Counted from the first letter of the stretch, positions 5,087 to 41,526 are shown. The stretch is 64,000 bases of DNA from Ostrea edulis (GCF_947568905.1 NC_079166.1:18104001-18168000), one strand, 5' to 3'. Numbers and translations are program-made. The notes: generated by a model from the letters alone, not told the origin.

Positions 5087-8000
5087 ATGGTGATAATTTG
5101 GATGGGAGGGAGACTGATGGTGTCTTTGTTCATTACGTTTTCCCTGCAGCTGGTCGGCGGAAATGGTTTGTCGTGTGATGGGTAAGAAATGACGTTTGCA
5201 TGATGGTCTGGAATAATCATCAACATTATATAATTTAAAACAATTTGTGGGTAAACTAAAGGCGAATATTTTTTGATCCGGGTTATTTAAGTCTGTAATA
5301 TATGATTGCATGTAAATGTTCTATTGGGTAAGAACTGATGTTTCCATAATGGTCTCGAATAATTATTTTTATTACAATATTAAACTTGTTAATAAAGTAA
5401 AGGAGTAGATATGATAATGGGAACTTTTTACATTAGTAAGATATGTACTTAAATGATCTATTGCTAAGACATTCTTGAGTGCAAAGAGGACTCTACGACT
5501 ATGTATCATAGCATCACATCAATTTTATCTATGTTTGTAGATATTTCAAATGTTGCTATGGGTACAAATGGGATAGAGATACTGAAAAATGTATCCGTAT
5601 GTACTTTGATATGTAAATGAATTTATTAATATCTACATGTTTATTATTTAAATAACATAGCAGTACATGTACAATGATATTTGAAATTGATTTTGATGAT
5701 AACAAAATACAAAAATAGTTTAAAAATCCAAACATAGATATGTATACAATGATCTTTGTGATAATGTTTAGAATTTCTTTTCCCTTGAAATTGTAGCCTG
5801 TGAGGTAGGGTATTATGGGATAGATTGTGCAGAGCCATGTCCCTTCCCCTCCTTTGGAAAGGAATGTCAGTTACTCTGCAACTGCTCTGAATATCAGTGC
5901 AATCATAAAAAAGGATGCCCAAAAAGTGGTAAGAAAGTTTAATTATAGAAATGTATATGATTAAGAATTGAACGTAGGGACACCTAGAAATCTTGCATAA
6001 TGATCATCTTGAAAAAAGTTGACTGTGTACATTTCAGATTGTGGACCAGGCTATGTAGATGACTTGTGTGACGTGAAATGTCGGTATCCAAGTTTTGGTT
6101 TAAGATGTCAGGGTGAATGTCTTTGTGAAATGAAGAAGTGTGATCCTGTAAATGGATGTCAGGGTGGGAAGTTTTATCAATACGAATGTTCTCTATGATA
6201 AATGTACTTAACAAGAAAATAAATATGCTTTCCAATTTACAAAATAAATATTCTTTTCCAAGTAAATAAGAACAAAGTATGAAATGATGTGTTACAGGAA
6301 GTTTAGAAGGTATTATCATGGAGGTGGTAACAACACCTGCTCCAAAGACTAGGATGACCCCTAACATTTCTACATCTCAAGACATGCCTACAGGTAAAGA
6401 AAACAACACCATAATGCGTCCGTTGCACAAATAAGCATACAACATACTTTGGATCAGCTTAGTATTCAAAATAAATTACTGCAAAGAGAATTCACACCAT
6501 GCTGACAAGGACAAAAATGTGTGACGTGTTTCATACCAATGGACGGGCTGTTCTTTACACACTCATTTTGATTATGCATTGTATGGGTCGCTACTTTATC
6601 TGATCAAGGTGCAGGGCTCACGGCGGGTTTGATCGGTCGACAGGGGATGCGTACTCCTCCTAGGTACCTGATCTTACCTCTGGTATGTCCAGGGGTACAT
6701 GTTTCCCAAATTTTAATTTTGTGGTCCTCATTTTTGAGTTTTGAGATTGATCAAAGCATTTCTACATCCCTGCACTGAATGAAAATGAAAATGAATATAA
6801 CAAATCGTGATCAATCTAATAAACCCCATAAAGAATACGAAATTACATGTAGAGCAAATACGAGATGCTAGACACACCAGAGGTGAAGTCAGATGCTTGG
6901 AAGGAGGCAGACATTCCATGTTAATTGGTCTCACCCTCTTTCAGCCCTCTATCGCGATCATGTAAAAGGAATAATTCATAGTCAAAATCATGATGGAAAA
7001 ACGACCTAACATTGGGTATGAAACATGCCAAACAACATATGGACTAACGACATGGATTGTATTCGGAAATACGGTCAATATAAAGACCAAAGAATATGCA
7101 AAATGCTGACTTCAAAGGAGACTACTGAACTTTAAGATCAACTTATTTGTCAGTAGATTGCCTCAATTAAAAACTGATCTTACTCAGAACATGTTATCTT
7201 GTATCGAATCATTTGACAAATATAGCGCTGATATACAGGTGCTGATGGAATATTGCTACATAAATATGAGAAGTTGACAACGGAGAAGCTGAAGTCATCC
7301 CATGCATGTGTCATAGAGTTAATTTGTCAGTTTGCTCTTAACATCTAAGTTCAATAAGATATTCAAATATTAAGATTTGGAGAGGTCTGTGGTATAATAT
7401 TTCGAGTTCATATGGATATATCGAATGAACGTATGGATCAAAATAAACACTGTGAATAGAAGAATCGTTGAGAAATCCATAATTTGAGATGAAGACCACA
7501 GCAAAGGTGTTTTTTCTTTCTATGCTAGAAGCTTATAAATAAACTCTTTTAGAATATAACAATAGATCGGCTAATAAGGTAACATAATTCGTACCTATGG
7601 ATGTCCAAAAGATTGTCCTTGATGATCAAAGACCAATATGAATTTATGCAAGGTGAAGATAACGAACAGTGATCAATCTCATAACTCCCACAAGCAATAC
7701 AAATTAGATAGTTGGGTAAACACGGACCCCTGGACACGGCAGAGGTGGGATCAGGTGCCTAGGATGAGTAAGCATCCCCTGTTGACCGGTCACACCCGCC
7801 GTGAGCCCCATATCCTGATCAGGTAAACGGAGTTATCCGCAGTCAAAATCAGTGTGCCAAGAACGGCTTAACAATCGGTATGAAACACGTCATATGAAAC
7901 ACGTTATATAAAATGATTTCAATAGTTTTACATTCGCTTCAGAGTATTTTAAATTTTCTGTTTTTATTACCAGATTAAGTAAATATTTCGTTTTCGTGTC

Positions 8001-8309
8001 TTCAATATTCCCTTCAGAAGAAAATTTAAAACCAGTACTGAATATAAAACAATATCCCGTGTATTTACAGGTTTGCATTATAATCATGATGACATAAATG
8101 TTTTAGAAACGTCAATTCAAAGTGACGCTGCATCAATATGGAATAATTTGAACGAGAAGGAAAAAGGTATGGTTATCAGCATTACGACGCTAGGACTACT
8201 GTTTCTTACCTTAACAGTCATGTACATCTGGGTATATCATCGCATTCTTGTAGAAACAAATAATCGTAGGAAAGCTACAGAAGATTCAGATGAAAATTCT
8301 GCAGTATGA
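5087..8309 (+). CDS. Gene A: intact 247-aa type I membrane protein with 2 EGF-like (MEGF10/SCARF-like) modules; exons 5087-5181, 5541-5596, 5797-5928, 6038-6163, 6298-6393, 8071-8309
   Basis: All introns are GT..AG with consistent phases (2,1,1,1,1); 744 nt open to the stop. MVIIWMGGRLMVSLFITFSLQLVGG (signal); YFKCCYGYKWDRDTEKCI; CEVGYYGIDCAEPCPFPSFGKECQLLCNCSEYQCNHKKGC; CGPGYVDDLCDVKCRYPSFGLRCQGECLCEMKKCDPVNGC; VVTTPAPKT stalk; TM GMVISITTLGLLFLTLTVMYIWVY; tail ...DENSAV. Confidence 0.85.
6540..7310. mobile_element. Old Penelope-like (Naiad-type) fragments: + strand 3' end (6540-6780) next to a - strand RT C-terminus plus 3' end (6800-7310)
   Basis: Similar to 32090-32610. The minus strand decodes to degenerate DDFSFSVVNFSYLCSNIPSAP. 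The same pair is at ~39985-40770. Confidence 0.7.
7640..7890 (-). mobile_element. Young 5'-truncated Naiad-type 3' end inserted in the last intron of gene A
   Basis: Near-consensus aaggtgaagataacgaacagtgatc ... atcggtatgaaacacgtca. Absent at the equivalent site in gene H (~41115). Confidence 0.85.
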
Positions 8310-9531
8310 AAAACGGGTAATCTGTTATAAGGTGTACTGTATCGGGACATGTTATGGAATGCTTGTATTTGTATTAATCGATGCTTTGTAATTGATAGAC
8401 TTTTCATGCTTTATATTCATTATTTTATATGTAAACTGTGACTTGCTGGTTGTCTTTCAATTTAAATAATCAAATTAGGAATATAAATACATGTATAGGC
8501 CAGGAGAAACTGTCTAATTTGTTTAATGGTAATATAAAACAATGAACATATGGTGTTATTTGTTCGAGATGGTGATATATGTTCAAGATCCACAGCCTTG
8601 ATTTTGCAAATATGCTAAATTTTGATTACAGCATTCTGAAGTAGACATCAGTTTCTTATATATGTAGTTGTGATCAGGCGACATCGTTCTACATATCGTT
8701 TTATATTGACTCAAACCGAATTATTCATGAAATAAAGATATATATATTTTGAAATTTCCTTTTTACCCTTCGTTATCTATAATAAAACAAGATAGAGTTC
8801 AATGTTGAAAAAAATATTTATAAAGCAGACGTGATTTTCTTCAGTTTTAAAACGGACTTCCGCGTTGTGTTCCGTTTTAATATTTGACTTGAAATATCTT
8901 AATGACCTTTTTCAGGTGAATTTATTTTAGGTCCTTTTCATATTAACTTTATTTTTTCCCCCGATGTAACAGGTAATCTTATTAGTTATCGGAATCTAGA
9001 CGTGTTTATTAAATCAATCGTTGGTAGATAAACTGAGAACGTAGATCATGATAAATTCGTAATGGATACTAAAATTATAGACGGTAAGTTGGAGAACAAA
9101 ATTGAACGATGAATCAGAAGATGAAGTGGTTTGAGATAAAATGAACAATAAGCCAGTATGTCTTACAAAACGTTAGCGAGAAGGTGTTTTACAAATTGCG
9201 TGATAAAATATCAATACTCGTCATATGGATGGTTGGCACCAAAACAGCACCTCACCAAGAAATTGTATTAGGAGAACAAGAAATCTAGGAGAACCAGTGA
9301 AAGTTTTTCTGGTAAGTACATGTATCAATGACTATAGTTTCCATACGATAATAGTCAACAGGGATTTATCAGTACCTTCTCGGTGACAGACGTGCGGCAT
9401 ATCATCTGTAATTCTCATTTTATAGAAGTCCATGAATGACTTGTTTCTAAAAGCACCATGCAAACATCACCTAATATCTTATAACCCGAATTACCTTTAT
9501 TCTCTCTGTATGATAATTTCTATGTTTGCAG

Positions 9532-10332
9532 ATCTTTCCAATGTTGCTGTGGTAGTGATTATAAATGAGATAGCAGTATTGCATACGTATGTGTCTGGAT
9601 ATCAAAGAGGCTTCATCAGTCCATGTACGATGATATTTTGAATTTGATATTATATAAAAGTACCAAACAAAAACGTATGATGGTTGAAATCCCGAAACAT
9701 CTCAATACATACTACAATTTTGTCGGAATTGTTTGAGGTAAAAAGTGGAATTTCTTTCTTTCTTTGAATTGTAGCCTGTAAGATTGGGTATTTCGGGAGA
9801 GATTGTACACAGTAATGCTCCTTCCTCTTCTTGGGAAAGGGATGTCAGTTATCGTAGATTAGGGTAATCATGCAAAAGGATGCCCAATAAAGGTGTAAGA
9901 AAGAGTAATTATCAAAATATATGAAACTTAGAAACAACATGGAATATTGCACAATGATTATCGTAAAAAAGATTTACTTGTTTAGGTTTCAGATTGTACC
10001 TCAGGTTACATTGTATGTAGTTGACTTTTGTGAAGTTAATACATTTCTTCTCTATCATACATGTACTAATTTGTGCCTACTTCTATGTAACAAGTAAATG
10101 AATATGCTTTACAACTAACGAAATAAAACGGTCATTTAAAAGTAAATAGAAATTAAGGATACAATGACGTGTTAAAGCAATTCTGAAAGATATTGTCACG
10201 GAAGTGGTAACAACGCCTGCTCCAAAGTCCAGGATGACCCTTAACATTTTCGTATCACTGCTGATGTCCAAGGAAGACTTCCATCATGAGACACTTCACC
10301 TGTTCTATCTACGATTCGAGAGATGCAGAAAG
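9532..10332 (+). pseudogene. Copy B (no exon 1, no TM exon)
   Basis: Exon 2 homolog has TGA, exon 3 homolog has TAA, exon 4 is largely deleted, and the stalk exon ends ag|gtaac at 10332. Confidence 0.8.
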
Positions 10333-11412: not shown

Positions 11413-11449
11413 CGTGAGATAATTTTTTTTTTAGTATTAATAGCAAAAA

Positions 11450-11499
11450 ATGGTGATGATTTGTATCGCAGGGAGACAGTTCGTGTCAGTGTTCATTAT

Positions 11500-11559
<60 letters not shown>

Positions 11560-11859
11560 GATCCTGGATAATCATTTATATTATACAATAGTAAATAAGA
11601 TGTGAGTAAAGTAAAGAGGTGCATATGATGATGGTCCCCATTAGTAGTATATGATTGTATCTAAATGTTCTAGTGCTACACATTCTTGAGAGCAGAGAAG
11701 ATTCTACAACTTTGTATTATAATACCACATCTGTGTTATCTGTTTGTAGACTTTTCAAATGTTGCAATGGATACAAATGGGATAGATATCCTGAAAAATG
11801 TCTTCGTATGTACATGAATCTGTAAATAAGTATATCAGCATCTATACGATTTAAAGGAT

Positions 11860-11916
<57 letters not shown>

Positions 11917-14663
11917 TATTTTGAATTTGAGGATAAACGAACAGTATGATAGTTTAAAAATCTAAACATAGAAACAAAAGTTTTTGTCGGAATTGTTTCA
12001 TTTCTTTTCCCATGAAATTGTAGCATGTGATATTATTTTGGGATAAATGGTAGACAGTAATGTTCCTTTCTCATCTTTGGGAAGGGATGTCAGTTATCCT
12101 AGAACTGCTCTAACATTTAGGTAGTCATGCAAAAGGATGCCCCAAAAGTGGTAAGAAAGTGCTATTATATAAAATATACCGGAATATGATTAAGAATTGA
12201 CATAAGAGATACCCTGGAATAACGTACAATGATGATCTTGAAAACTCTTACTTGCTGACGTTTCAGATTGTCCGTCAGGCTATGTAGGGGATGTTTGTGA
12301 CTTGAAATGCCGGTATCCAAGTTTTTGTACGGACTGTCAGAATAAATGTTTGTGTGAACAGGAGACGTGTGATCCAGCAAATGGATGCCAAGGTGGGAAG
12401 TATTATTATTACAAATATTTATGTATGTTACCTGTGCTTAACAAGGAAATTTATACTTTACAACTTACAAAATGAAAACAAATATTTCTTTAAAAGTAAA
12501 TAGAAATAAAGTATACAATGATGTGATGCAATTTTGGAAGATATTGTCATGGAAGTGGTAACAACACCTGATGCAATGTCCAGGATGACCCATGGTATCT
12601 CCGTGTCACCAAGACATGATGCTGACATTGACACTTCAACTTTTCTATCAAGGACTACAATCTCGCAGAAACGTAAAGAAAACAAAAATAAAATACAATG
12701 CTCGTTTACACAAATGGGCAATCACTTTACTTCGAATCAGCTCAGTATTCAAACTAAATTACAGCAAAATAAAATTACACTGTGATCACACGGAGAATAT
12801 TGTCTGGCGTGTTTTATAATAATTGTTAGATCGTTCTCTGAAAGGTGATTTTGACTATGGATTATTTCTTTTGCTGATCAAGATGTAGGGCTCACAACGA
12901 GTGTGACCCGTTGACAGAAGATATATACTCCTCCTAGGCACCTGATCGCACCTCTTGTATATCCAGGGGTCTATGTTTACACAAGTTTTGATTTTGTATT
13001 TCTGATAGGAGCTATGAGATTTATTACTGTTCGTTATCTTCACGTTTTTATGATATGTGCTACACCGATCCAGATTCAATTCTTTTGTCATCCTCGATAT
13101 GAGAAAGAGATAACTTGCTAGGAAAGAAAGGACATCGTTAGTTTTGAGTGTTCTTCTATTTGGATCTTCTAAACAATCTGGCTGAAATGTGTTGATCTAG
13201 AAAAAACAAAACAAAATAGAAGGTCAACACAACCCTTAAATGTTCAGAACAAATTAACCAAATTCTAAGTTGGTTTGTATATTATTCGAATCATATTGAT
13301 AAGCTTTAAATTTTATTAGAATATTAGTGCTGCTCTGTCAAAATACAAGCGTTAGTATAGTTGTTTGTTTGTGTTTCCATGGATCGTTGTTTTACGGAAA
13401 ACTAAAATCATAAAGAATTTTAAGATTGCAATGTTCAATTTTTTAAAAAAAGAATCGAGATAGCAAATATCCATTTTAAACTACACATTGGGTGAGATTT
13501 TACAAATTAAAAAAAAAAATCATCCATGTACCTTTGAGTTGAATGAAATGTTAGATGTTTGCAATATCAGATAAAAATGGAATTACAAAAAAATCATGAT
13601 TTATTTTTATTTTTGGTAGATTACTGAAAACCCGCTATTGTAAGTACTTTAGACAAGATTTGCACTCTGCCTGTAAACAAAGATGATTAACTATGTATCG
13701 TTTTGTATGCTCTAGCCTCCGATTTTGATGCTTTAGTTTAGTCGGTCATATAATAAAAGAATGTTGTCCATTTACGTAGAAAGTCAATTCAACAAGTGTA
13801 CTGCCCCAAAGTGAGTGAAGTCAGTGATTAAGCTATTCGCGACGGATCACGGAATATTGTTAGATAAATATGAGACGTTGACGATGGAGAGACTGAAATC
13901 ATCCCATGTGTCATAGACTTGACCTGTCAGTTTCCCTTTTGACATCTATTTCAATAAACTATCCAAATATGAAGATGTGAAAGTCGTTGTGGTGTCTTGT
14001 ATTTCGAGTTTACCTGGATATATCGAATCTACGTATGTATGAAAATGAACATTGTGAATAAAAAAAAAACATTGATACATGTAAATCTATATTTTGAGAT
14101 GACAGTAATATCAAACGGTTTTTGTTACTATTATAGAAGCTTTTGAATAAATGCTACCTCTGTTAGAATATAAGAGTAGCTCGACTAATAGAGGAGCACA
14201 ATTCCTGCTTTTGAGGCGTCCACAAGATTGTCGGAAGTGTTGATGACCAACAACCAATATGCATTTATATAAAAATAATTTCAAGAGCTTTACATTCGCT
14301 CCAGGATACTTTAGATTCTCTGTTTTTATTACCAGGCAAAGTAAATATTTCATTTTCGTATCTCCATTCGCAAGAAAAATTAAAACCAGTAGTGAATATA
14401 AAACAATGCACCGTGTGCCTACAGGTTTGCATGAGAATCATGATCACGTAAATGTTTCAGAAACGTCAATACAAAGTCACGCTGCATCAATGCGGGAAAA
14501 TTTGAACGAGAAGGAAAGAGTCATGGTTGTCAGCATTACGAGGCTAGGACTACTGTTTCTTATCTTGACAGCTATTTATATCTGGGTATCTCATCGCATT
14601 CATGTAGAAACAAAGAATCGTGGCAAAGTAATAGAATATTTAGATAAGAACTCTGCAATATGA
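11450..14663 (+). pseudogene. Copy C
   Basis: Exon 1 is broken by (TA)n at ~11503-11557 and exon 3 is frameshifted. Exon 4 (~12268-12393) and the TM exon (14425-14663, tail DKNSAI) are still open. Confidence 0.8.
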
Positions 14664-16284
14664 AGAACGGTTGATCTGTTGTTACAAAGTGCAGTGTATC
14701 TGGACATGGTGTGTAATGTCTGTTTTTGTATTTACCTATGTTTTGTAATTGAGAGACTTTTCATACTTTATTATGTATAATTGTATATGTAATCTGTGAC
14801 TTCTTGGTTTTCTTACTATTTGAAATAATGAAACTATAGAACATAAATACATTTAGAAGTACGGAAAACCTATCTAATTTGTATTATGGTAATATAAAAC
14901 AATGAACACGTTGCAGTTCAAAGCAGCGCATTGTACCATAAATGAAGGTCACTTCGATGTAAACTCTGTAAATTTGGTTTTGTCATGCAATCAAAAGTTG
15001 TTTCAGATGACGTTATAAAATTACGGACGATAACTCATGTCAATACACACTTTTCGATCCCTCAAATGAAAGTTTGATAGCGCCCTGTAAATCACGCCAA
15101 GTTACTTTCGTAAACATTGCCATGAAAATTAATCCATACATTAACAACAGACATTTTTGTGTATAAAATTCAAGTTGTAGAAAAATCACTGTACTTGAAC
15201 TTGAAATGTGGATGTCATATCAGGCGCGTTAAACTACTATTTCTCTCTTAGAACTATATAAGTGTGTATATATGAAAGGTGAAGATGACGAACAGTGACC
15301 AATGCCATAACTTCTATAAGCAATACAAAATAGGAAGTTGGGCAAACATGGGACCCTGGGCACACCAGAGGTAGGATAAGGTGTCTAGGAGGAGTAAACA
15401 TCCCCTATCCGCCGGTCACAACCACCGTGAGTCCTATATCTTGATCAGGTAGTTCATAAAGTTCTGATAATAATGTGTCATTTTGAATTAGGGTTCAATT
15501 GGTTAGGTACACTCAACTTTTTGGAATTGATGTAAAACAAGTTTCCGTTTTCTTGTATTGGACATGTGCAATGAGTTCATTTACAGCATTAACGTTGGTC
15601 ATTAGAAAATAATAGTCAGAGATGCTCTTGCAAATTTGTATCGCAGGGAAACTGTTGGCTTCCATCTTCATTAAGTTCTCCCTGCAGCTGGTTTGTTGGA
15701 ATGAGATTCCGTCTGGTGGGTGAGAAATGACGTTTGTATAATTGTCCTGAATAAATATTGATATCATGTGATATTAAACGGTATGTGAGTACAGTAAAGG
15801 AGTGCGTATGATGATGGTAATGTGTGTATGTAAATGTACTATTGCTAAGACTTTCGTGAGTGTAGAGATGACTCAAAGACTATGTATCATAGTATCGCAT
15901 TTATCCATGTTTGCAGATCTTTCAAATGTTGTAGTGGTTAGAAATGGGATAGCAATCGTGAAAAAATATTTCGTATGTATATAGATGAAAGGTGAAGATA
16001 ACGAAGAGTGATCAATCTCCTAATTCCTATAAGCAATATAAAATAGATAATCGGGCAAACACTGACCCCTGGATACACCAGAGATATCAAAACCACATTA
16101 TCAGTACATGAACGAAGATATTTTGAATGTAATTTTATACAGAACACCAAAACGTATGATATTTAAAATCCCCAAACATATCAATACATACTACAATTTT
16201 GTCGGACGTGTTCGAGGTAAAACGTGAAAAATTTCTTTTCCCCTGAAATTGTAGCCTGTGACATTGAGTATATTGGGATGGATT

Positions 16285-16670
16285 GTGCATCAAAATTGGT
16301 ACCGTATAAGTTTTACATTATGACCCCTGGGTCGAGGCCTCTGCTGGTGGACTGTTAGTCCCCGAGGGTATCTACAGCCCAGTAGCTAAGTACTTCGTTG
16401 CTAACTTGAAAATACGGATGTATATTTAATTGCTGTTATAAAATTTAGAAATTCATTTCAAAATTAAGGATTATCTCCCTCGTGCATAGCTCTTATCCTT
16501 GGACGAATTTGGCTCCACTTGTTTGGCACGCTGTTTTTGGCTATATTTAGATCTTAAACTTCATAGTTATTTCGGATTTCAAACATTTCGGTTGAGCATC
16601 ACTGAAGAGACATTATTTGTCGAAATGCGCATCTGGTGCATCAAAATTGGTACAGTATAAGTTTTACATT
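16285..16670 (+). mobile_element. Full-length retrozyme-like element (351-nt monomer plus ~35-nt terminal direct repeat)
   Basis: gtgcatcaaaattggtac(c/a)gtataagttttacatt at both ends (16285-16319 and 16636-16670). No ORF. Contains a hammerhead. Splits EGF exon 3 at gattgt|acaaag. Confidence 0.85.
16596..16639 (+). ncRNA. Minimal type I hammerhead ribozyme, intact core
   Basis: Helix I GCATCA/TGGTGC; CTGAAGA core; helix II GACA/TGTC; GAA; palindromic helix III ATGCGCAT; AUC cleavage triplet (cut after 16633). Confidence 0.85.
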
Positions 16671-17421
16671 GTACAAAGAAATGTCCCTTCCCCATCTCTG
16701 GAAATGAATGGCAGCTAACCTGCAACTGTTCTAAAATTAGTGTAATCAAGCAAAGGATGCCCAACAAGTGGCAAGAAAGTGTGATTATATAGATATGACG
16801 AACTTAGAGATAACCTGGAATATTGCTTAATGATAATCGTGAAAAAAATTGTTTGTTTACGGTTCAGGTTATATATTTATTTGAATTTTATGATGTTAAT
16901 ATAATTTTTTCTCTATCATACATGTACTAATATATACTTACATATCTGTAAATAAACGTGCTTTACAGTTTACGAATTAAAAATAAACATTCATTTAAAA
17001 GTAAATAGAAATAAGGATACAATGACGTGTTAAAGTACTTCTGGAAGATATTATCAAGAAGGTGGTAACAACACCTGCTCCAGGATGACCCATAGCATTT
17101 CTGTATCACTGAGATATGGTGCTGATGTCCACCGAAGACTTCCTTCGTGAGTGACTTCACCTGTTTTATCTACGACTCCAGATATTCAGAAAAGTATAAA
17201 AGCAAACAAAAATACAACACCTCGTAAATTAACACTGTGTTCATGCAGCGAGATTAATACGTATTATATTGATGCGGATTAAATTATTTTCCTTTGTTCG
17301 ATACAAAAAAAAGACAATTTGCTCAAGAAACATTAATAAGTCGTAAAATAGTTCTTCGTTTTGCATCTTGTAAACAATTTTGCTTAGATGTGTTGCTACG
17401 AAATAGACAGATGACATTGAA

Positions 17422-17794
17422 TGGTACCGTATAAGTTTTACATTATGGCCCCTGGGTCGAGGCCTCTGCTGGTGGATTGTTAGTCCCCGAGGGTCTCTAC
17501 AGCCCAGTAGCTAAGTACTTCGTTACTAGCTTGAAAATACGGATGTATATTTAATTGCTGTTATAAAATTTAAAAATTCATTTCAAAATTAAGGATTATC
17601 TCCCTCATGCATAGCTCTTATCCTTAGGCGAATTTGACTCCACGTTTTTGGCACGCTGTTTCTGGCTATACTAGCTCTAACATTTCATTGTTATTTCGGA
17701 TTTCAAACATTTCGGTTGAGCATCACCGAAGAGACATTATTTGTCGAAATGCGCATCTGGTGCATCAGAATTGGTACCATATAAGTTTTACATT
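17422..17794 (+). mobile_element. Retrozyme-like element copy 3 (350-nt period); hammerhead 17720-17763 with CCGAAGA core mutation
   Basis: Terminal repeat tggtacc(g/a)tataagttttacatt at 17422 and 17772. Absent from the paralogous site at ~52817. Confidence 0.85.
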
Positions 17795-18319
17795 GAAGAT
17801 CGGTCGATACAGCTATCTGATATTAAGAGGAAGTGGTTTACGTTTTTGGTTGGTATACTATTCTTCTCACATTAATGATAAGGTTAAAATAACAAAGGGG
17901 CATATGATTCATGACATTCTGACTCGCGATAGTTGTTATGGGTTATCACGGGACCCTTACCCCTCCTCAGACACTTTACTCCACCTCTGATGTTTCCAAG
18001 GGCCGTTGCTTATTGGACACTAAATTTTGCATTTATAATAGGATTTATGAGATTCAAAACTATTCGTTATCCTCATATTATCCTCCGATCTGAAAGGAAA
18101 TAATTTATGAATATTTTTTTAAATATTTGGTACCATGGATTTCCTGATATAATATGTATCAGAGTGAGTTAGGAAAGTATGAAGGCACAACAAATTGATG
18201 GAGAATAAGTTTCTGTTTCCTTGTTTCATACATGTTACAATCGATTACATTAAAACATAGCATTGATAACTAAGAACTGATAGTCGAGAATGGTCAGGAG
18301 TTGTAACGGAGGAGGTCTG

Positions 18320-24268: not shown

Positions 24269-24330
<62 letters not shown>

Positions 24331-26432: not shown

Positions 26433-27899
26433 ATGGTGATGATTTGGATAAGAGGGAGACTGTTGGTGTCAGAGTTCATCACGCTTTCCCTGCAGCTGGT
26501 CGGTGGGAATGATTTTCCTTGTGGTAGGTAGGAAATGAAGTTTGTATAATGGTCTTGGCTAATCATTTATATTATGTAATATTAAATTATATATGAGTAA
26601 AGGGTTGTATATACGGATGGATACTATATTTAATGATATTTAGCAATATATGTAATTAAATGTTCTATTACTAAGACATTCTTGACTGTCAATAGGACTC
26701 TATGACTATATATCATAGTATCACGTCCATTTTATCTACGTTTGCAGATCTTTCAAATGTTGCACTGGTAGTGGTTACAAATGGGATAGCAATATTTAAT
26801 ACGTATGTATGTTGATATTAAAACTACATTATCAGTCTATGCACGATGATATTGTGAATTTGATATGATACATAAAAAGTATGATAGTTCAAACCCAAAA
26901 ACCTGTCAATACATGCTACAATTTTATCGGAATTGTTTGAGGTAAAAAGTAAAATCTCTTTTTTTCCTTAAAATGTAGTCTGTGATATTGCATGTTTTGG
27001 GTTACAGTGTACACAGCAATGTCCTTTCCCCTCCTATGGGAAGGGATGCAAGTTATCCTGCAACTGTTCTAACGATTAGGGTAAACATGGAAAGGGATGA
27101 CCCAAAAGTTGTAAGAAAGTGTAATCATATCAATATATCGAATTTAGAGACAACCTGCAATGATGCTCACTGATTATCTCGAAAACAGTTACTTATTTAC
27201 GTTTTAGATTGTAAGCCAGGTTATGTATTTGACTAGTGAAGTTAATACAAATTTTTCTCTATCATACATGAACTAATTTGAACCTACGTATTGTATGAAC
27301 AGTCTCCTTTAAAGTCAGCATTTCGCAAATTCTATGGTCATTATAACGATGTAATCTGCCAATATAACATATCATGGGGTAAAATGATATCTGACGTGTT
27401 TCATACCGATTGTTAGGCGGTTCTTGGTACACTAATTTTGACTACGGGTAGCTCCGTTTACCTAATCAAGATATGGGGCTCAATGTGGGTGTTACTGGTC
27501 AACAGGGGATGCTTATTGCCCCGAGGCACCTGGTTCCACTTCTGGTATATTCATGGGTCCGTGTTTGTCCAACTCTCTATTTGGTATTGCTTATAGGAGT
27601 TATGAGATTGAGTTTGCTATCTTCACCTTTTATATATGTAACAAGCTAATGGATATGACTTCCAACTTGCGAAATAAAACAAACCCATTCATTTACAAGT
27701 AAATAGAGATAAAGTATACAATGCTGTGTTAAGACATTTCTGGAAGATACTGTCATGGAAGGGGTAACAAAACCTGCTCCACAATCCAGAGTGGTCCATA
27801 ACGGTTCCGTATCCATGCGACATGATGCAGATGTCAACGGAAGATTTCCTTCAAAAGACACTTGACCTGTTTTATCTATGAATCCAGATATGCAGAGAG
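26433..27899 (+). pseudogene. Copy F (TM-less type)
   Basis: Exon 1 26433-26527 is open, exon 2 has TAA, exon 3 has TAG, exon 4 is a remnant, stalk exon ends at 27899. Confidence 0.8.
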
Positions 27900-29035: not shown

Positions 29036-29280
29036 ATGGTGATGGTTTGCATCGCGGGGAGATTGTTGGTGTCAGTGTTCATTACATATTCCCCGGAACT
29101 GGTCGGTGGGAATGGTTCGCTGTGTGATGGGTAAGAAATGAGGTTTGCATAATAGTCGTCAATAACAATTATATTATACAACATTAAATAATATGCGAAT
29201 AAAGTAAAGTTGTGCATATGATGATGGAGACTTTTTACACTATTAAACATATGTAAATGTTATATTGCTAAGGACTCTAC

Positions 29281-29332
<52 letters not shown>

Positions 29333-32300
29333 TATCATCACATCTATTTTATCTATGTTTGTAGACGTTTCAATTGTTGCAGTGGTTACAAATGGAATAG
29401 AAATACTGAAAAATGTATCCGTATGTACATGAATTTGTAAATGAAAATATCAGCATCTATACTATCTAAAAGAAATTATCAATACTTATATGTTGGTATT
29501 TTTAATTTTTAAGATAAACAAATAATATGAAAACCCAAACATATAAATAGAAACAACGTGTTTTTTTTTGTTGGAATTGTTTCATTTCTTTCCCTCTTAA
29601 ATTGTAGCTTGTGAGATAGGTTTTTTTGGGGTAGATTGTGCACGGCAATGCGTCTTTCCCTCCTTTGGGAAGGAATGTCAGCTATCCTGCAACTGCCCTG
29701 AAGATCAATGTAATTATGAAAAAGGATGTCCAAAAGGTGGTAAGGAAGTTTAATTATAGCATATTATAGTATTTGATAGATTATAGTATATGATTAAGAA
29801 TTGAACTTGGGGACATCTAGAAATCTTGCAAAATGATTATGTTGAAAAATGTTGATTGTTTACATTTCAGATTGTGGACCAGGCTATCTTGGTGACTTTT
29901 GTGACGTGAAATGCCCATATCCAGGTTTTGGTACGGAATGTCAGGATGAATGTTTGTGTGAGCAGGAGAAGTGTGATCCTGTAAGTGGATGCCAAGGTGG
30001 GAAGTTTTATGAAAACAATTTTTCTCTCTATGATACATAAACTTAACAAGGAAATAGATGTACTTTACAAGTTACAGAATATATACAAATATTGATTCGG
30101 AAGTAAATAAGAACAAAGTGTATGAAATGATGTGCTACAGGAAGGTCAGAAGGTAATTTCATGGAAGTGGTAACAACACCTGTTCCAAAGTCCAGGATGA
30201 CCCATAACATCACCGTATCACTACGGCATGATGCTGATGTTAGCAGAGGTTTTTCTTCACGAGACACTTCATCCGTTCTATCTACCACTCCAGACATGCC
30301 TAAAGGTAAAGAAAACAAAAACGCAATGCCTACTTCACACAAATAGATATACAACATACTTTGCATCAGCTTAATATTCAAAACGAATTAAGGTAAAGAA
30401 ATTTTACACCATGCTGACAAGTACAATGCTGTCTGAGGTGTTTCATACCAATTGATGAGCGGTACTTTACACACTCATTTTGACTACGGATTACTATTTT
30501 ACCTGACCAAGATATAGGGGTCACGGCGGGTGTGACCGGTCGACAGGGGATGCTTACTCCTCCTAGGCACCTGATCCCACCTCTGGTATGTCTAGAGGAC
30601 CGTATTTTCCTTCTTTCAATTTTGTGTTCTTCATAAAAGTTTTGAGATTGATCAAAGTATTTTTACATCCCCACACTGAATGAAAAGAATATAACAAATC
30701 ATGATCAGTGTAATAAATCCCATAATGAATACGGAATTAAATGTAGAGCAAACACAAATCCCTGGACACACCAGAAATAGGGTCAGGTGCTTAGGAGGAG
30801 GCAGCCATCCCATGTGGAAAAAATGTTCACATGGATGCAAGGTCTATCGAATTAAAGTATGGATGAAATGAACCCTGTGAATAGAAGAATCGATGAGAAA
30901 TATATTTATATCCATACATTTTGCTAAGTGCAACTCATGTCAAAACAGGCAATTCGCAAGTAGTTTTTTGCTGGATCTCATATATCATAAAATAAGAGGA
31001 ACAACGTTATATAAGTGAAAATGTAATTCTATCAAATAAATAACGTAAAAAGACAACATGTAAAACAAATTCTAAAAATAATAAATGGCTGGGATATACA
31101 GGCATGCAAACAAGGGAAAATCTGACTAGATTGAATGAGAGACACAATGACTAGTCATACATAAGATATCCCAGACAATATAATTTCAAGAAAGCTAACT
31201 CCATTAACTAAAAATTAATCTTACCAATCATATTTATAAAGATTATAGCAAAACGGGTGGTGCACAAAAGAGCCACAAGCAAACATACGTGCTGATTAAA
31301 GTATGTGTGTTGCTGCGTCACCCAAAAATTGCCAGAAAAAAGAAAAATTCTACAGAGTAATTGAGACTCATTTTGCAATGTGACTCTATAAATCAGAGAT
31401 TAACAATGTGATTATTTTCTGATTAACGATGAAACATGTAGATACAGAAATGGTAAAACAAATGATATCATTTAAGTATTAGAAAACAGTATACTAATCA
31501 ATAACATTAAAACCTATGACTTTTCAACACTATACACGACCATTCCTCACGATAAATTAAAGACTAGCCTTTTTGACACCATAGACAGTTGTTTCTTCAA
31601 CAAAAACGGAAAACGGAAATATTCATATCTAGTGATCAATCATTCAAAAATTTACTTTGTTAAACACCACTCTGATTCCACGCACAAGTACTCTGAAGTT
31701 GAAATAAAAATTATGCTAGAGTTCCTCATTGATAATATATTCGTGGTCTTTGGTGATCAGGTCTTCCAACAGTCTGTTAGAATTTCCATGGACACGAATT
31801 GTGTTCCTTTGTTAGCTGACCTGTTTCTATATTCAAATGAAGCAGAATTTATTCAAAAACTTCTACACGAGAAGAAAAAATATCTCGCTGTGGCCTTCAA
31901 TTCGACATTTAGATATATCGATGACGTTTTGTCTATTAACAATAATAGTTTTCATTCACATGTCAATTTGATATATCCCTGTGAGCTCGAAATAAAGGAC
32001 ACCACAGAATCGTTCACTTCTGCTTCATACTTAGATATTTTATTGAACGTTGACATTAACGGCAAACTGACAACTCAACTGTATGACAAACGGGATGATT
32101 TCAGCTTCTCCATCGTCAACTTCCCATATTTATGTAGCAATATTCCATTATCACCTGCATATGGTGTTTATATATCTCAACTGATTCGATATGCAAGAGC
32201 TTGTTCTGCGTATAGTCAGTTTTTAAATCGAGGTAAGCTACTGACAAACAAGTTGATAATACAGGGGTTTCAACAGTCTCGATTGAAGTCAGTATTTCGC

Positions 32301-33037
32301 AAGTTCTATGGTCGTTATAACGATCTAGTTCGTCAGTACAACCTCACATTGGGTCAAATGCTGTCTGACGTGTTTCATACCGATTGTTAAGCCGTTCTTG
32401 GCACACTGATTTTGACTGCGGATAACTCCGTTTACCTGATCAGGATATAGTGCTCATGGCGGGTGTGACCGGTCAACAGGGGATGGTTACTCCTCCTAGG
32501 CACCTGATCCCACCTCTGGTGTGTCCAGGGGTCCGTGTTTGCCCAACTATCTATTTTGTATTGCTTATAGGAGTTATGAGATTGATCACTGTTCGCTATC
32601 TTCGCCTTGGATGATAAAGACAATTATGAATTTACGTAAAAGAATTTCAAGAGTTTTACATTCGCTTCAGTATTCTATAAATTCTCTGTTTTAATTCCCA
32701 GATTAAGTTAATATTTCGTTTTCTTATCTTCATTTTTAACTTCGCATGCAAAATTAAAACCAGTAGTGAAAATAAAACAATACACCGTGTATTTATAGGT
32801 TTGCATTTTAATCATGATTACATAAATGTTTTAGAGACATCAATTCAAGGTGACACTGCATCAATGTGGAAAACGTTGAACGGGAAAGAAAGAGGCATGG
32901 TTATCAGCATTACGACGCTAGGACTACTGTTTCTTATCTTAACAGCCTTGTACATCTGGGTATCTCATCGACTTCGTGTAGAAACAAATAATCGTAGGAA
33001 AACAACAGAAGATTTGGATGAGAACTCTGCAGTATAA
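29036..33037 (+). CDS. Gene G: intact 270-aa EGF-like type I membrane protein; exons 29036-29130, 29365-29420, 29608-29739, 29871-29996, 30141-30305, 32799-33037
   Basis: 813 nt open across GT..AG introns, with the same exon sizes as gene A except a 165-nt stalk. RFNCCSGYKWNRNTEKCI; CEIGFFGVDCARQCVFPSFGKECQLSCNCPEDQCNYEKGC; CGPGYLGDFCDVKCPYPGFGTECQDECLCEQEKCDPVSGC; tail DENSAV. Confidence 0.85.
31497..32610 (+). mobile_element. 5'-truncated Penelope-like retroelement (probably Naiad clade): open RT C-terminal half (31497-32390) plus 3' UTR
   Basis: TYDFSTLYTTIPH (motif A), degenerate QxxGIPMG motif B, FRYIDD (motif C), DKRDDFSFSIVNFP, GVYISQLIRY. The ORF stops after the thumb with no C-terminal GIY-YIG, as in N-terminal-EN PLEs. 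Confidence 0.75.
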
Positions 33038-35350: not shown

Positions 35351-35429
35351 ATTAAGGAGGTATGCTGCACCAGAGTTTGATATGGATGGAAAGTGGAGGA
35401 TATGTACAATATTTTGAAAGTAAAAACTT

Positions 35430-38568: not shown

Positions 38569-38591
38569 TTTCCGTTTCCTTGTGTCGCAAA
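38569..38591. promoter_or_regulatory. ISRE-like plus C/EBP-like motif upstream of gene H
   Basis: tttccgtttccttgtgtcgcaaa, 67 bp from the end of the ISRE-like core to ATG 38646. Confidence 0.45.
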
Positions 38592-38645
38592 CTCAAGGAG
38601 TTAAATTGCAACATCACCGTTAATCATCACATATGACAGCCGAAA

Positions 38646-41526
38646 ATGGTGATGATTTGTATCGGAGGGAGACTGATGGTGTCTTTGTTCATTACGTTTT
38701 CCCTACAGCTGGTTGGAGGAGATGGTTCGTGGTGTGGTGGGTAAGAAATTACATTTTTATGATTGTCTAGAATAATCATCAACATTATAGAATATAAAAG
38801 AAAGGAGTATATATGATGCTGGGGACTATTTACATCAGTTATACATGATCGTATGTAAATGTTCTATTGCTAAGACATTCTTAAAAGTAAAGAGTACTCT
38901 ACGGCTACATATCATAACATCACATCAATCTTATCTATGTTTGTAGATCTCTCAAATGTTGCAGTGGTTTCAAATGGGATAGAAATACTGAAAAATGTAT
39001 CCGTATGTACATTGACATACAAATGAAATTATCACTATCTACATGTTTACTATTTAAAAAAATATATCAGTACATACAGTGATATTTTGAATTGTCTTTG
39101 ATAATATAAAATGCAATGGTAGTTTGAAAATCGAAATATATAATTGTATACAAAAATCTTTGTGAGAATTTCTAAAATTTCGTTCCTCCTGAAATTGTAG
39201 CTTGTGAGGTTGGGTATTATGGGATAGATTGTGCAGAACCATGTCCCTTCCCCTCCTATGGAAAGGAATGCCAGTTACTATGCAACTGCTCTGAAGCTCA
39301 GTGTAATCATGAAACTGGATGCCCAAAAGATGGTAAGAAAGTTTAGTTACAGAAATGTATATGATTAAGAATTGAACTTAGGGAGACCTAGAAATGTTGC
39401 AAAATGATTATCTTGAAAATGTTGAGTGTATACAGATTATCGACCAGGTTATATAGATGACTTGTGTGACGTGAAATGCCTGTATCCAGGATTTGGTGTA
39501 TTATGTCAGAATTAATGTTTTTGGGAATAGAAGAACTGTGATCCTCTAAATGGATGTCAGGGTGTGAAGTTTTATTAATTCGAAGGTTCTCTGTGATACA
39601 TGTACTTAACAGGGAAATAAATATGCTTTACAAGTTACAAAATAAAAACAAATATTTATTTGGAAATAAATAAGAACAAATTATGAAATGATGTGTTACA
39701 GGAAGTTTAGAGGGTATTATCATGGAAGTGGTAACAACACCTGCTCCAAAGTCCAGGATGACCCATAATATCACCGTATCACTAAGACATGATGTTAACA
39801 TAGGTTTTCCTTCACAAGACACTTCATCCGTTGTATCTACCACGCCAAACATGCCTAAAGGTAAAGAAAACAAAACCACAATTCCTCCTTTACACAAATA
39901 GGTATACAACATACTTCACATCAGCTTAGTATTCAAAATGAATTACTGCAAAGAAAATTTACACAATGCTGACAAGAATAATACTCTCTGACGTGTTTCA
40001 TACCAATTTTTGGGCCGTTATTTACAGACTCATTTTGATTACGCATTGTATGGATCGCTACTTTATCTGATCAAGATGTAGGGCTCACGGTGGGTGTGAT
40101 CGGTTTACAGGGGATGCCTTCCTCCTCCTAGGTATCTGATCCTACCTCTGGTATGCCCAGGGGTACGTGTTTCCCAAATTTTAATTCTGTGTTCCTTTTT
40201 GAGTTTTGAGATTGATCAAAGCATTTCTACATCCCCGCACTGAATGAAAATGAATATAACGAATCGAGATGAATCTAATAAATCCCATAAAGAATACGAA
40301 ATTACTTGTAGAGCAAATACGAACCCTTGAACGTACCAAAGGTGGGGTCAGGTGCTTAGAAGGAGGGATGTATCCCATGTTAATTGGTGTCACCCCCTTC
40401 GAGTCCTCCATTGCGATCATGTAAACGGAATAATTCATAGTCAAAGTCATGATGGAAAGAACGGCCTAACAATAGGTATGGAACATGCCAAACAACATAT
40501 GGACTAACAACATGGATTGTATTTGGAAATACGGTCAATATAACGACCAAAGAATATGCAAAATGCTGTCTTCAAAGGAGACTAGTGAACTTTAATATAA
40601 ACTTACTTGTCAGTAGCTTGCCTCAATTAAAAAAAACTGATCCTACTCAGAACATGCTCTCTTGTATCAAATCATTTGAGAAATATAGCGTTGATATGCA
40701 GGTGCTCATGGAATATTGCTACATAAATATGAGAAGTTGACGATGGCGAAGCTGAAGTCATCCCACGTGTCATAGTGTTGATTTGTCAGTTTGTCCTTAA
40801 CACCTATGTTTAATAAGATATTCAAATATTAAGAAGATGTGGAGAGGTCTGTGGTATAATATTTTGTTCATATGGATATATCGAATGAACGTATGAATAA
40901 AAATGAACACTGTGAATAGAAGAATCGTTGAGAAATCCATGATGAGAGATGAAGGTCACAGTAAAAGTTTTTTTCTTCCTATGCTAGAAGCTTTTGAATA
41001 AAATTTGCCACTTTTAGGATGAAAATAAATAAATAGCTCGGCTAATAAGGGAACACAATTCGTACCTATGGATGTCCATCAGATTTTCAGAAGACTTGAT
41101 GATGAAAGAACAATAGAAAGTTATATAAAATGATTTCAAGAGTTTTACATTACCTTCAGTGTACTTTGAATTCTCTGTTTTTATTACCAGAATAAGTAAA
41201 TATTTCGTTTTCGAATCTTCATTTTTCCCTTCACAAGAAAAATTAAAACCAGTATTGAATATAACACAATACACCTCGTATCTACAGGTTTGCATTATAA
41301 TCATGATGACATAAATGTTTTAGAAACTTCAATTCAAAGTGACGCTGCATCAATGTGGAACAATTTCAACGAGAAGAAAAAAGGTATGGTTATCAGCATT
41401 ACGACGCTAGGACTACTGTTTCTAATCTTAACAGTCATGTACATCTGGGTGTCTCATCGACTTCATGTAGAAACAAATAATCGTAGGAAAGCTAAAGAAG
41501 ATTCAGATGAAAATTCTGCAGTATGA
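38646..41526 (+). CDS. Gene H: exons 38646-38740, 38947-39002, 39201-39332, [39436-39561 decayed], 39702-39860, 41288-41526; intact single-EGF receptor if exon 4 is skipped, otherwise a pseudogene
   Basis: Five exons are open with canonical sites. Exon 4 has TAA and TAG in frame plus Cys losses, but it is phase 1-1, so skipping keeps the frame. Confidence 0.6.

What the first reader, a model, noticed from the sequence alone, without database searches (positions are those of the whole stretch)
5087..41526. Cryptic tandem family of minimal EGF receptors: candidate polymorphic immune or self/non-self recognition locus
Seen: a six-exon gene absent from the ORF track, present as about 12 copies. 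It has only 1-2 EGF-like modules (8 Cys, C-x2-G-[YF]-x-[GD]-x2-C...YP/FP-x-[FY]G), a mucin-like stalk, one TM and a ~25-aa tail. Known: MEGF10/CED-1/Draper/SCARF have many EGF repeats and Tyr-based tails; invertebrate allorecognition loci (Botryllus fester, Hydractinia Alr) are clustered, diversified surface proteins with pseudogenes. Inference: a fast-evolving recognition-receptor cluster, not a true MEGF10 ortholog.
Basis: partly seen in the sequence, partly recalled or inferred. Interest (0 to 1): 0.7.

Follow-up and report, generated by a model that had tools for sequence, protein, structure and literature searches.

The report
Oyster mini-EGF membrane-protein gene array
This stretch of a flat-oyster chromosome holds 13 tandem copies (two or three working, the rest dead) of an already annotated, uncharacterised oyster-only gene for a small membrane protein with one or two EGF-type knobs, and nothing yet shows an immune or self/non-self role.

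Summary
The window (Ostrea edulis, C3:18.104-18.168 Mb) carries 13 same-strand copies of a six-exon gene with canonical GT-AG borders; exons 3-5 are phase 1-1. Only A and G are intact two-EGF genes. H has a dead exon 4 and codes a one-EGF form. Ten copies are pseudogenes or fragments.

The genes are not cryptic. RefSeq already models them: A = XP_048767856.2 'MEGF11', G = XP_048767837.2 'MEGF10', H = XP_048767851.1 'angiopoietin-1 receptor-like'.

The array is part of a 327-kb, 54-copy cluster, the only place in this genome with this signal-peptide exon and this TM/tail exon. Elsewhere I found only ~41%-identical relatives in Saccostrea and Crassostrea.

The protein has a signal peptide, a CC-x-G-Y-x-W remnant, one or two eight-Cys Tie/MEGF-type EGF modules, a glycosylated stalk, a near-invariant TM and a 23-aa tyrosine-free tail ending S-A-V. 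These are not MEGF10 orthologues.

Intact copies show weak purifying selection (omega about 0.6, EGF loops about 1, no exon above 1). No RNA run was available, and polymorphism and copy-number variation could not be measured. An immune or self/non-self role is unsupported. The scan has already reported sister mini-EGF clusters on other DNA of this genome.

The parts
5087..8309 (+). Copy A, intact two-EGF gene (RefSeq XP_048767856.2, 'MEGF11 isoform X2', 235 aa). Exons: 5087-5181, 5541-5596, 5797-5928, 6038-6163, 6298-6393, 8107-8309.
   Evidence: GT-AG borders and matching phases. P0011 matches these exons at 100%.
29036..33037 (+). Copy G, intact two-EGF gene (RefSeq XP_048767837.2, 'MEGF10', 258 aa). 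Exons: 29036-29130, 29365-29420, 29608-29739, 29871-29996, 30141-30305, 32835-33037.
   Evidence: P0009 equals the exon translations. Intron 5 holds a reverse-transcriptase ORF fragment.
38646..41526 (+). Copy H, one-EGF gene (RefSeq XP_048767851.1, 'angiopoietin-1 receptor-like', 214 aa). Exons: 38646-38740, 38947-39002, 39201-39332, 39702-39860, 41324-41526. Exon 4 (39436-39561) is dead and skipped.
   Evidence: Exon 4 has two in-frame stops and has lost Cys1. P0008 lacks exon 4 and matches the other exons at 100%.
9521..10331 (+). Copy B, pseudogene. It has e2, e3 and e5 remnants, a decayed e4, and no e1 or e6.
   Evidence: Stops in e3, with the shared 'CTQ*C' stop seen in all six B-type copies of the cluster.
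11450..14663 (+). Copy C, pseudogene with all six exon remnants.
   Evidence: e1 runs into a TA microsatellite. e3 is 5 nt short and carries stops. The e5 acceptor is TG.
15625..17192 (+). Copy D, pseudogene. e3 is split by an inserted repeat of about 375 nt at about 16290-16663.
   Evidence: No ATG, a stop in e2, and e3 hits at 16230-16289 and 16664-16781. The repeat belongs to family D6.
18290..22245 (+). Copy E, remnant. e1 and a broken e2 are fused to an e5 piece, followed by an open e6. e3 and e4 are deleted.
26433..27898 (+). Copy F, pseudogene (e1-e5, no e6).
   Evidence: Stops in e2, e3, e4 and e5.
42734..43515 (+). Copy I, B-type pseudogene.
   Evidence: Shared stop in e3. 86-89% DNA identity to B within the duplicated A-B-C / H-I-J block.
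45010..46480 (+). Copy J, C-type pseudogene (e2-e5). Its expected e1 falls in the N run 44684-44830, which I left untouched.
   Evidence: Frameshift and stops in e3, a stop at the end of e4. N run located.
51484..52598 (+). Copy K, D-type pseudogene.
   Evidence: Stops in e2 and e3, GC donor.
52825..53432 (+). Copy L, headless and tailless fragment. It has a partial e3 plus open e4 and e5, with a TG in place of the e5 acceptor.
56746..56818 (+). Copy M, e4 fragment.
62428..62478 (+). First coding exon (signal peptide) of the next family gene (RefSeq XP_056016235.1, 'PEAR1-like', 147 aa). The rest of that gene lies beyond the window.
   Evidence: P0003 residues 1-17 match at 100%.

Best explanation
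**What it is.** This is a birth-and-death tandem family of small type-I membrane glycoproteins, specific to the flat-oyster lineage. It descends from the Tie/MEGF10/PEAR1-type EGF-repeat receptors that are massively expanded in bivalves.

**Protein layout, shown from sequence.**
- a signal peptide
- a short CC-x-G-[YF]-x-W-x6-C piece, which from my own knowledge looks like the C-terminal third of an EMI domain
- one or two eight-Cys EGF modules
- a 31-55-aa Ser/Thr/Pro-rich stalk with one conserved N-glycosylation sequon
- a nearly invariant TM helix (GMVISITTLGLLF.ILT)
- a 23-aa charged tail without tyrosine, ending -S-A-V in most intact copies

**How the array grew.** A roughly 30-35-kb super-unit of about seven diverged paralogues, several of them already dead, was duplicated en bloc repeatedly. 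The result is 54 copies or fragments in 327 kb, of which about 9-12 are intact. This window holds 13 copies: two intact, one in a one-EGF form, and ten dead.

**How it probably works (inferred, not shown).**
- The EGF head is a variable binding surface on a fixed cystine scaffold.
- The protein cannot signal like CED-1/Draper/MEGF10, because the tail has no phosphotyrosine motifs.
- It more likely works as a binding or adhesion subunit. Its output would depend on partners met through the conserved TM helix, which carries a GxxxS/polar-Thr face, and through a class-I PDZ-ligand-like C-terminus.
For: **Gene models and copies**
- Exon borders and phases.
- RefSeq proteins identical to A, G and H.
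- Copy census of the window and the cluster.
- e6 has 24 matches and e1 has 22 matches in the 895-Mb genome, all within C3:18.081-18.401 Mb on the + strand.

**Restricted distribution**
- The e6 profile against 1.84 billion representatives gave 6 hits: three O. edulis, two short metagenome fragments, and one Saccostrea cucullata at E = 7e-6.
- The full-length profile search found only O. edulis proteins plus one Crassostrea/Magallana angulata cluster.
- The heads are 41% identical to those relatives.

**EGF type**
- PDB 6u11_A 'EGF-like domain-containing protein', E = 4e-6 (single sequence) and 6e-5 (profile).
- Tie2 EGF repeats, E = 1.3e-4.
- SCARF1, E = 0.43.
- The nearest ESM Atlas clusters are molluscan small proteins, followed by MEGF10/11 and Draper.

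**Topology, tail and stalk**.

**Selection**
- Per-exon omega: e1 0.47, e2 0.67, e3 0.51, e4 0.72, e6 0.61. Within e6, the TM is 0.39 and the juxtamembrane part 1.02.
- All sampled Cys columns are invariant in the 10-12 intact copies, and loop omega is 0.94-1.01.
- Four independent sister pairs pooled give omega 0.62, P = 0.0013 for fewer non-synonymous changes than neutral.

**Growth by block duplication**
- Blocks at 95-98% identity, with offsets of 30-35 kb and 176-242 kb.
- The same stop codon is present in all six B-type and in the C-type copies.
Against: **Expression was not tested.**
- No RNA run was found, and the laid runs are genomic.
- No Logan transcript contig encodes A, G or H; each protein is on record on the genome contig only.
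- Transcription therefore rests on RefSeq models whose support I could not inspect.

**Domain and structure evidence is thin.**
- Pfam finds no EGF or EMI domain above threshold, even on the full proteins.
- The AlphaFold model is poor, with mean pLDDT 48.

**The functional inferences are soft.**
- The S/T-x-V end is present in only 8 of about 12 intact copies. PDZ binding and TM partnering are inference.
- Lower dS in e6 (0.18) than in e1 or e3 (0.34-0.44) means TM/tail conservation may be partly gene conversion rather than selection.
- Omega of 0.6 is weak constraint.
Confidence: 0.62

Rival explanations
1. The array is a polymorphic immune or self/non-self recognition locus, and its EGF heads diversify under positive selection to recognise pathogens, altered self or non-self cells.
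For: - The loops between the fixed cysteines evolve at omega about 1, and the juxtamembrane ectodomain at 1.02.
- The locus is a tandem birth-and-death cluster with many pseudogenes.
- The nearest named relatives (MEGF10, Draper, CED-1, SCARF) are engulfment or scavenger receptors.
- The one run from a second study (X4) gave contigs 3-6% different from the reference here (table 8).
Against: - No exon has omega above 1, and the whole gene is at 0.62.
- The tail lacks every motif those engulfment receptors signal with.
- There are no expression or challenge data.
- The variants are confounded by paralogues. For example, the exon-1 changes turn A's N-terminus into the sequence of another copy.
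- Copy number grew by block duplication that carried dead copies along.
- From general knowledge, oysters are solitary and no allorecognition phenotype is known for them.
Confidence: 0.15
2. The array is essentially a decaying gene graveyard. The 'intact' copies are merely young duplicates that have not yet been hit, and the family has no current function.
For: - About 80% of the 54 copies are broken.
- Exon 4 is decaying in the H-type copies.
- Omega is 0.45-0.70 in intact sister pairs, each only marginally significant. One pair (copies 49 and 25 of the census) is at 1.1.
- Several RefSeq models are chimeras across copies.
- No transcript contig is on record.
Against: - The Cys scaffold is invariant in 10-12 intact copies at dS of 0.24-0.34, while dead copies lose it.
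- The pooled test rejects neutrality (P = 0.0013).
- TM omega is 0.39.
- The same architecture persists in Saccostrea and Crassostrea. The Crassostrea relative sits contiguously, apparently intron-free, on a 2.4-kb Logan contig. I read that as a transcript, though I did not check the run type.
Confidence: 0.13
3. The array is a combinatorial splicing locus. Heads of one copy are spliced onto downstream exons of another, in a variable-head/shared-tail arrangement, to multiply ectodomain variety.
For: - Exons 3-5 are phase 1-1, so any skip or swap among them keeps the frame.
- RefSeq isoforms X1 and X3 (P0019, P0018) join e1-e3 of the upstream copy at C3:18,081,483-18,082,329 to e4-e6 of copy A, across 27.7 kb.
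- P0014 and P0010 also span several copies, and P0002, P0008 and P0001 skip exons.
- There are about twice as many heads as e6 tails.
Against: - Nearly all tail-less heads are decayed. Only one is fully open (copy 28 of the census, at C3:18,232,146), so there is no conservation of a 'variable exon' set.
- The upstream head in X1/X3 has lost the first Cys of EGF1 and has a broken e5 of its own.
- The models may be read-through noise, or artefacts of multi-mapping RNA-seq.
- No reads could be checked.
Confidence: 0.07

Closest known systems
MEGF10 / MEGF11 / PEAR1 / Draper / CED-1 engulfment-receptor family
   Same: Both are type-I membrane proteins. Both have a CC-x-G-[YW] motif ahead of eight-Cys EGF modules of the same sequence type. 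NCBI names A and G after this family, and the ESM Atlas places it next after the molluscan small-protein clusters.
   Different: These proteins have 1-2 EGF modules instead of about 15-17. No Pfam EMI or EGF hit reaches threshold. The tail is 23 aa without NPxY, YxxL or ITAM. The family is confined to a single locus of one oyster lineage.
Tie1/Tie2 (angiopoietin receptor) EGF repeats, PDB 2gy5 / 4k0v; also PDB 6u11_A 'EGF-like domain-containing protein'
   Same: These are the best solved-structure sequence matches to the two EGF modules, with all Cys aligned (E = 1.3e-4 and E = 4e-6 to 6e-5). This explains the RefSeq name of copy H.
   Different: There are no Ig, FNIII or kinase domains. The whole protein is 214-258 aa.
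Other flat-oyster 'mini-EGF receptor' clusters already reported by this scan (s1-281906, s1-271430, s1-301879, s1-311871) and the small molluscan protein clusters in the ESM Atlas
   Same: The build is the same: signal peptide, one or two EGF modules, stalk, TM and a short tail. The genes are tandem, oyster-only, and surrounded by many decayed siblings.
   Different: Those clusters are described with tyrosine-rich, ITAM- or ITIM-like tails. This family's tail has no tyrosine and ends in S-A-V. Its e1 and e6 exons occur nowhere else in the genome. I did not re-examine those loci.
Invertebrate allorecognition loci (Hydractinia Alr, Botryllus fuhc/fester)
   Same: Both are clustered, duplicated surface-protein genes with pseudogenes.
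   Different: The domain types differ, and there is no known fusion/rejection biology in oysters (own knowledge). No omega above 1 was found, and allelic polymorphism was not measurable here.

Membership tests
MEGF10/MEGF11/PEAR1/Draper/CED-1 | N-terminal EMI domain (Pfam PF07546) | tested here: not met
   hmmscan found no EMI hit up to E = 10 on single exons and up to E = 1 on the full proteins P0009, P0011 and P0008. Only a CC-x-G-[YF]-x-W-x6-C remnant of about 22 aa is present.
MEGF10/MEGF11/PEAR1/Draper/CED-1 | Long array of EGF / laminin-type EGF repeats (about 15 or more) | tested here: not met
   There are one or two modules per gene.
MEGF10/MEGF11/PEAR1/Draper/CED-1 | Eight-Cys EGF module of the Tie/MEGF/SCARF sequence type | tested here: met
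   PDB sequence and profile matches: 6u11_A at E = 4e-6 and 6e-5, Tie2 EGF repeats at E = 1.3e-4, with the Cys aligned. Caveat: Pfam EGF_laminin and EGF_PEAR1L do not reach any listed score.
MEGF10/MEGF11/PEAR1/Draper/CED-1 | Long cytoplasmic tail with NPxY and YxxL/ITAM phosphotyrosine motifs | tested here: not met
   The tail is 23 aa with zero Tyr in A, G, H and most e6 exons.
Tie / angiopoietin receptors | Ig and FNIII ectodomain modules and a cytoplasmic tyrosine-kinase domain | tested here: not met
   The proteins are 214-258 aa with no Pfam domain. The RefSeq name rests on the EGF modules only.
Allorecognition / polymorphic recognition locus | Diversifying selection (omega > 1) on the ectodomain | tested here: not met
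   Nei-Gojobori omega is 0.51 for e3 and 0.72 for e4, or 0.94 and 1.01 without the Cys columns. The pooled gene value is 0.62. Site models were not run because no PAML or HyPhy was available.
Allorecognition / polymorphic recognition locus | Extreme allelic polymorphism and copy-number variation between individuals | tested here: inconclusive
   Only four genomic contig sets from two studies were available. Three are near-identical to the reference and may be its source, and the variants are mixed with paralogue cross-mapping.
Allorecognition / polymorphic recognition locus | A fusion/rejection or other self/non-self phenotype mapped to the locus | not testable with these tools
   No paper in the library mentions these genes.
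Oyster mini-EGF membrane proteins (RefSeq 'MEGF10/11-like' small proteins; this scan's earlier clusters) | Signal peptide, 1-2 EGF modules, Ser/Thr-rich stalk, single TM, short tail; tandem and ostreid-restricted | tested here: met
   Searches show the build. Relatives in Saccostrea cucullata and Crassostrea/Magallana angulata have the same build at 41% head identity.
Class-I PDZ-ligand membrane proteins | Free C-terminus [S/T]-x-[V/I/L] | tested here: met
   The ending is S-A-V or S-T-V in A, G, H and five other intact copies (8 of about 12 intact). It is lost in others, which end SGA, SAA or SMA, or have lost the stop. Binding to a PDZ domain was not testable.

The most novel reading that the evidence does not exclude
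The 327-kb array is a diversity-generating surface-protein locus. Because exons 3-5 are phase 1-1, transcripts started at one copy can skip exons or splice onto exons of downstream copies. RefSeq isoforms X1 and X3 do exactly this across 27.7 kb into copy A. Together with haplotype-specific copy content, this would give each oyster a combinatorial, individual-specific set of one- and two-EGF heads on a common TM/PDZ-ligand tail, usable for cell or pathogen recognition.
Probability: 0.08. Interest if true: 0.7.

Novelty: new member of a known kind. Interest (0 to 1): 0.3.

Why it matters
Bivalve genomes hold hundreds of 'MEGF10/11-like' genes, and transcriptome papers list them as immune genes on the strength of the name alone.

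This locus shows how misleading the names are. Three neighbouring paralogues are called MEGF11, MEGF10 and angiopoietin-1 receptor-like. All three are in fact 214-258-aa, one- or two-EGF proteins with a tyrosine-free tail, so they cannot signal like the engulfment receptors they are named after.

It also gives a clean, bounded example of how such families grow: one locus, 54 copies, and block duplication that carries dead genes along.

Direct value is modest unless expression or population data reveal a recognition role.

Tried and rejected
**Searches that gave nothing**
- Pfam, exon by exon and on the full RefSeq proteins, gave nothing above threshold.
- AlphaFold2 on a 10-sequence family alignment gave mean pLDDT 48 and pTM 0.26, too poor for a fold search, so I ran none. 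The ESM Atlas's own model is also weak.
- Literature searches for MEGF in oysters, and for the LOC identifiers, found no paper on these genes. The origin of PDB 6u11 could not be traced.
- Rfam found no family at gathering score in the whole window. It found no hammerhead even at E <= 1 around 4600-5100 and 16150-16800.

**RNA evidence**
- The look-up of sequencing runs returned no RNA run.
The only joints were at high-copy repeats.
- Splicing, strand and expression therefore remain untested, and variant calls were rejected as evidence of polymorphism because paralogues map at the 92% threshold.

**A model I dropped**
- I first favoured the e6 acceptor at 8071. I dropped it because all family proteins in the database start e6 at the 8107-type acceptor.

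- I did not build or type a joined exon sequence. Searches were made exon by exon by reference, and full-length comparisons used protein ids that the searches themselves returned.
- The N run 44684-44830 was left as it is.

Full report
**1. What is in the sequence**

The window is G000:C3:18,104,001-18,168,000 of an 895-Mb genome. C3 is 98,268,724 bp long, the same length as the contig that carries the Ostrea edulis RefSeq proteins found later. The organism is therefore the European flat oyster.

A motif scan found eight + strand exons with the pattern C-x2-G-[YF]-x-[GD]-x2-C. Reading copy A by hand gave a six-exon gene:
- e1 5087-5181: ATG and signal peptide
- e2 5541-5596: CCYGYKW motif
- e3 5797-5928: first EGF module
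- e4 6038-6163: second EGF module
- e5 6298-6393: stalk
- e6: TM, tail and stop at 8307-8309

All introns are GT-AG. e1 ends in phase 2, and e3-e5 are phase 1-1. Two acceptors (8071 and 8107) both fit e6. Every database protein of the family starts e6 at the 8107-type site.

**2. Copies in the window**

tblastn of A's exons, followed by DNA mapping of the exon borders, found 13 copies or fragments, all on the + strand.
- A (5087-8309) and G (29036-33037) are intact.
- H (38646-41526) is intact except for exon 4, which has two stops and has lost its first Cys.
- B, C, D, E, F, I, J, K, L and M are pseudogenes or fragments. The damage includes stops, frameshifts, lost acceptors, a microsatellite in C's e1, a repeat of about 375 nt splitting D's e3, and an e2-to-e5 deletion in E.
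- J's expected e1 falls in the N run 44684-44830, which I left untouched.

**3. The genes are already annotated**

I searched a profile of the five e6 translations against 1.84 billion representative proteins. It gave only six hits. These led to RefSeq proteins of O. edulis:
- P0011 = XP_048767856.2, 'multiple EGF-like domains protein 11 isoform X2', 235 aa
- P0009 = XP_048767837.2, 'MEGF10', 258 aa
- P0008 = XP_048767851.1, 'angiopoietin-1 receptor-like', 214 aa

These match A, G and H (the last without exon 4) at 100%, exon by exon. The exon models are therefore independently reproduced, but the family is not 'cryptic'. No paper in the library mentions these genes.

**4. Extent and distribution**

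In the whole genome, e6 has 24 matches and e1 has 22. All lie within C3:18.081-18.401 Mb on the + strand. EGF exon 4 has about 27 strong matches there, plus hundreds of weak ones in other MEGF-like clusters.

I fetched 364 kb around the window and counted 54 copies or fragments between 18,074,691 and 18,401,239. Nine have all six exons open, and three more are near-intact.

Self-alignment shows blocks repeated at offsets of about 30-35 kb at 87-94% identity, and younger blocks at 95-98%:
- window 7,906-29,298 matches C3:18,353,344-18,375,228
- window 47,000-60,222 matches C3:18,326,659-18,340,837

All six B-type copies share the same stop ('CTQ*C'), and the C-type copies share 'RQ*C'. These genes were therefore dead before the blocks were copied. 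Whether the youngest blocks are real duplications or retained haplotypes cannot be told here.

Outside O. edulis, the exhaustive e6 search found one Saccostrea cucullata protein (E = 7e-6) and two short metagenome ORFs. The profile word search added a Crassostrea/Magallana angulata cluster. Heads are 41% identical and have the same build. The Crassostrea relative lies contiguously on a 2.4-kb Logan contig, which I read as a transcript.

**5. The protein**

- There are two hydrophobic segments, an N-terminal signal and one TM.
- Pfam gives nothing above threshold.
- Sequence searches of solved structures do place the Cys modules with Tie/MEGF-type EGF repeats: 6u11_A at E = 4e-6 and 6e-5, Tie2 at E = 1.3e-4, SCARF1 at 0.43.
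- The ESM Atlas puts the protein beside three molluscan small-protein clusters (scores 0.91-0.96), then beside MEGF10/11 and Draper (scores 0.80-0.85, leads only).
- The AlphaFold model was too poor to use.
- The stalk is 37-42% Ser/Thr/Pro, with a conserved N-I-[ST] sequon.
- The TM stretch GMVISITTLGLLF is invariant in ten RefSeq paralogues.
- The tail (HR..VETNNRRK..ED.DENSAV) has no Tyr. It ends [ST]-x-V in 8 of about 12 intact copies. That fits a class-I PDZ ligand, which is my inference.

**6. Evolution**

Pairwise Nei-Gojobori omega among the intact copies:

| Region | omega |
|---|---|
| e1 | 0.47 |
| e2 | 0.67 |
| e3 | 0.51 |
| e4 | 0.72 |
| e6, whole | 0.61 |
| e6, juxtamembrane | 1.02 |
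| e6, TM | 0.39 |
| e6, tail | 0.58 |

- With the invariant Cys columns removed, e3 and e4 give 0.94 and 1.01. The cystine scaffold is held while the loops drift or diversify.
- Four independent sister pairs pooled give omega 0.62, P = 0.0013 against neutrality.
- Pseudogene pairs have too few changes to compare.
- dS is lower in e6 (0.18) than in e1 or e3 (0.44 and 0.34). This hints at gene conversion or recombination in the long intron 5.

**7. Expression and polymorphism**

No RNA run was found. The one read-laying run (6,000 letters) showed four genomic contig sets. Coverage was equal on introns and exons, there were no splice joints, and depth was huge over the repeats at about 5000-5046, 6600-6800, 7200-7400 and 7600-8000.

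Three of the runs are near-identical to the reference and may be its source. The fourth differs by 3-6% in the pieces laid. Many of the 'variants' look like paralogue cross-mapping, so polymorphism and copy-number variation remain unmeasured.

**8. Chimeric RefSeq models**

- P0019 and P0018 (isoforms X1 and X3) join e1-e3 of the copy at C3:18,081,483-18,082,329 to e4-e6 of A.
- P0014 and P0010 span several copies.
- P0002, P0008 and P0001 skip exons.
- The upstream head has lost Cys1 of EGF1 and has a broken e5 of its own.

This is a lead for inter-copy splicing, or an annotation artefact.

**9. Verdict**

'Not a MEGF10 orthologue' is supported. 'Fast-evolving' is partly supported. The immune or self/non-self role has no direct evidence.

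This is another member, with a tyrosine-free tail, of the oyster mini-EGF membrane-protein class. The scan has already met that class at several other loci of this genome.

Noticed in passing
window 6038-8309 joined to C3:18,081,483-18,082,329 (22 kb left of the window): RefSeq isoforms X1 and X3 of the 'MEGF11' gene (XP_056016232.1, XP_056016233.1) splice e1-e3 of an upstream paralogue onto e4-e6 of copy A, across 27.7 kb. They differ from each other by one residue at that junction. Other RefSeq models (XP_056016764.1, XP_056016762.1) also run across several copies.
   Followed up: partly
window 31632-32390 and 50287-50733: These are reverse-transcriptase-like ORF fragments with a ...FRYIDDVLS... 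motif. The first lies in intron 5 of copy G, and the two belong to a 92%-identical repeated block (31541-32607 and 49941-51004).
   Followed up: no
window 4731-5030, 16354-16653, 17479-17778, 56409-56708: A repeat of about 300-375 nt (family D6) occurs at these four places. One copy splits exon 3 of pseudogene D and another ends 40-60 nt before A's ATG. Rfam finds no hammerhead or any other family there, even at E <= 1, contrary to two first-reader notes on this window.
   Followed up: partly
window 5000-5046, 6600-6800, 7200-7400, 7600-8000: These are very high-copy repeats, with summed contig word depth of 10^4 to 10^7 against about 10-10^3 in neighbouring bins. Most lie in intron 5 of copy A. 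Contig joints show a repeat of about 39 nt tandemly reiterated around 7650-7688.
   Followed up: no
window 44684-44830: This 147-N gap lies exactly where exon 1 of pseudogene J is expected, about 300 nt before its e2 at 45010. J's missing e1 may be an assembly gap rather than a deletion.
   Followed up: no
window 11500-11544: A TA-rich microsatellite replaces the 3' half of exon 1 in pseudogene C (translation ...M*YIYIYIYIY).
   Followed up: no
window 62428-62478: This is the signal-peptide exon of the next family gene (XP_056016235.1, 'PEAR1-like', a one-EGF form with a different first exon). Its EGF exon is 4.5 kb further on, outside the window.
   Followed up: partly
C3:18,074,691-18,076,531 (L016): The leftmost gene of the cluster (XP_056016234.1, 171 aa) is a diverged one-EGF relative whose TM exon is only 39% identical. 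Its tail also ends S-S-V.
   Followed up: no
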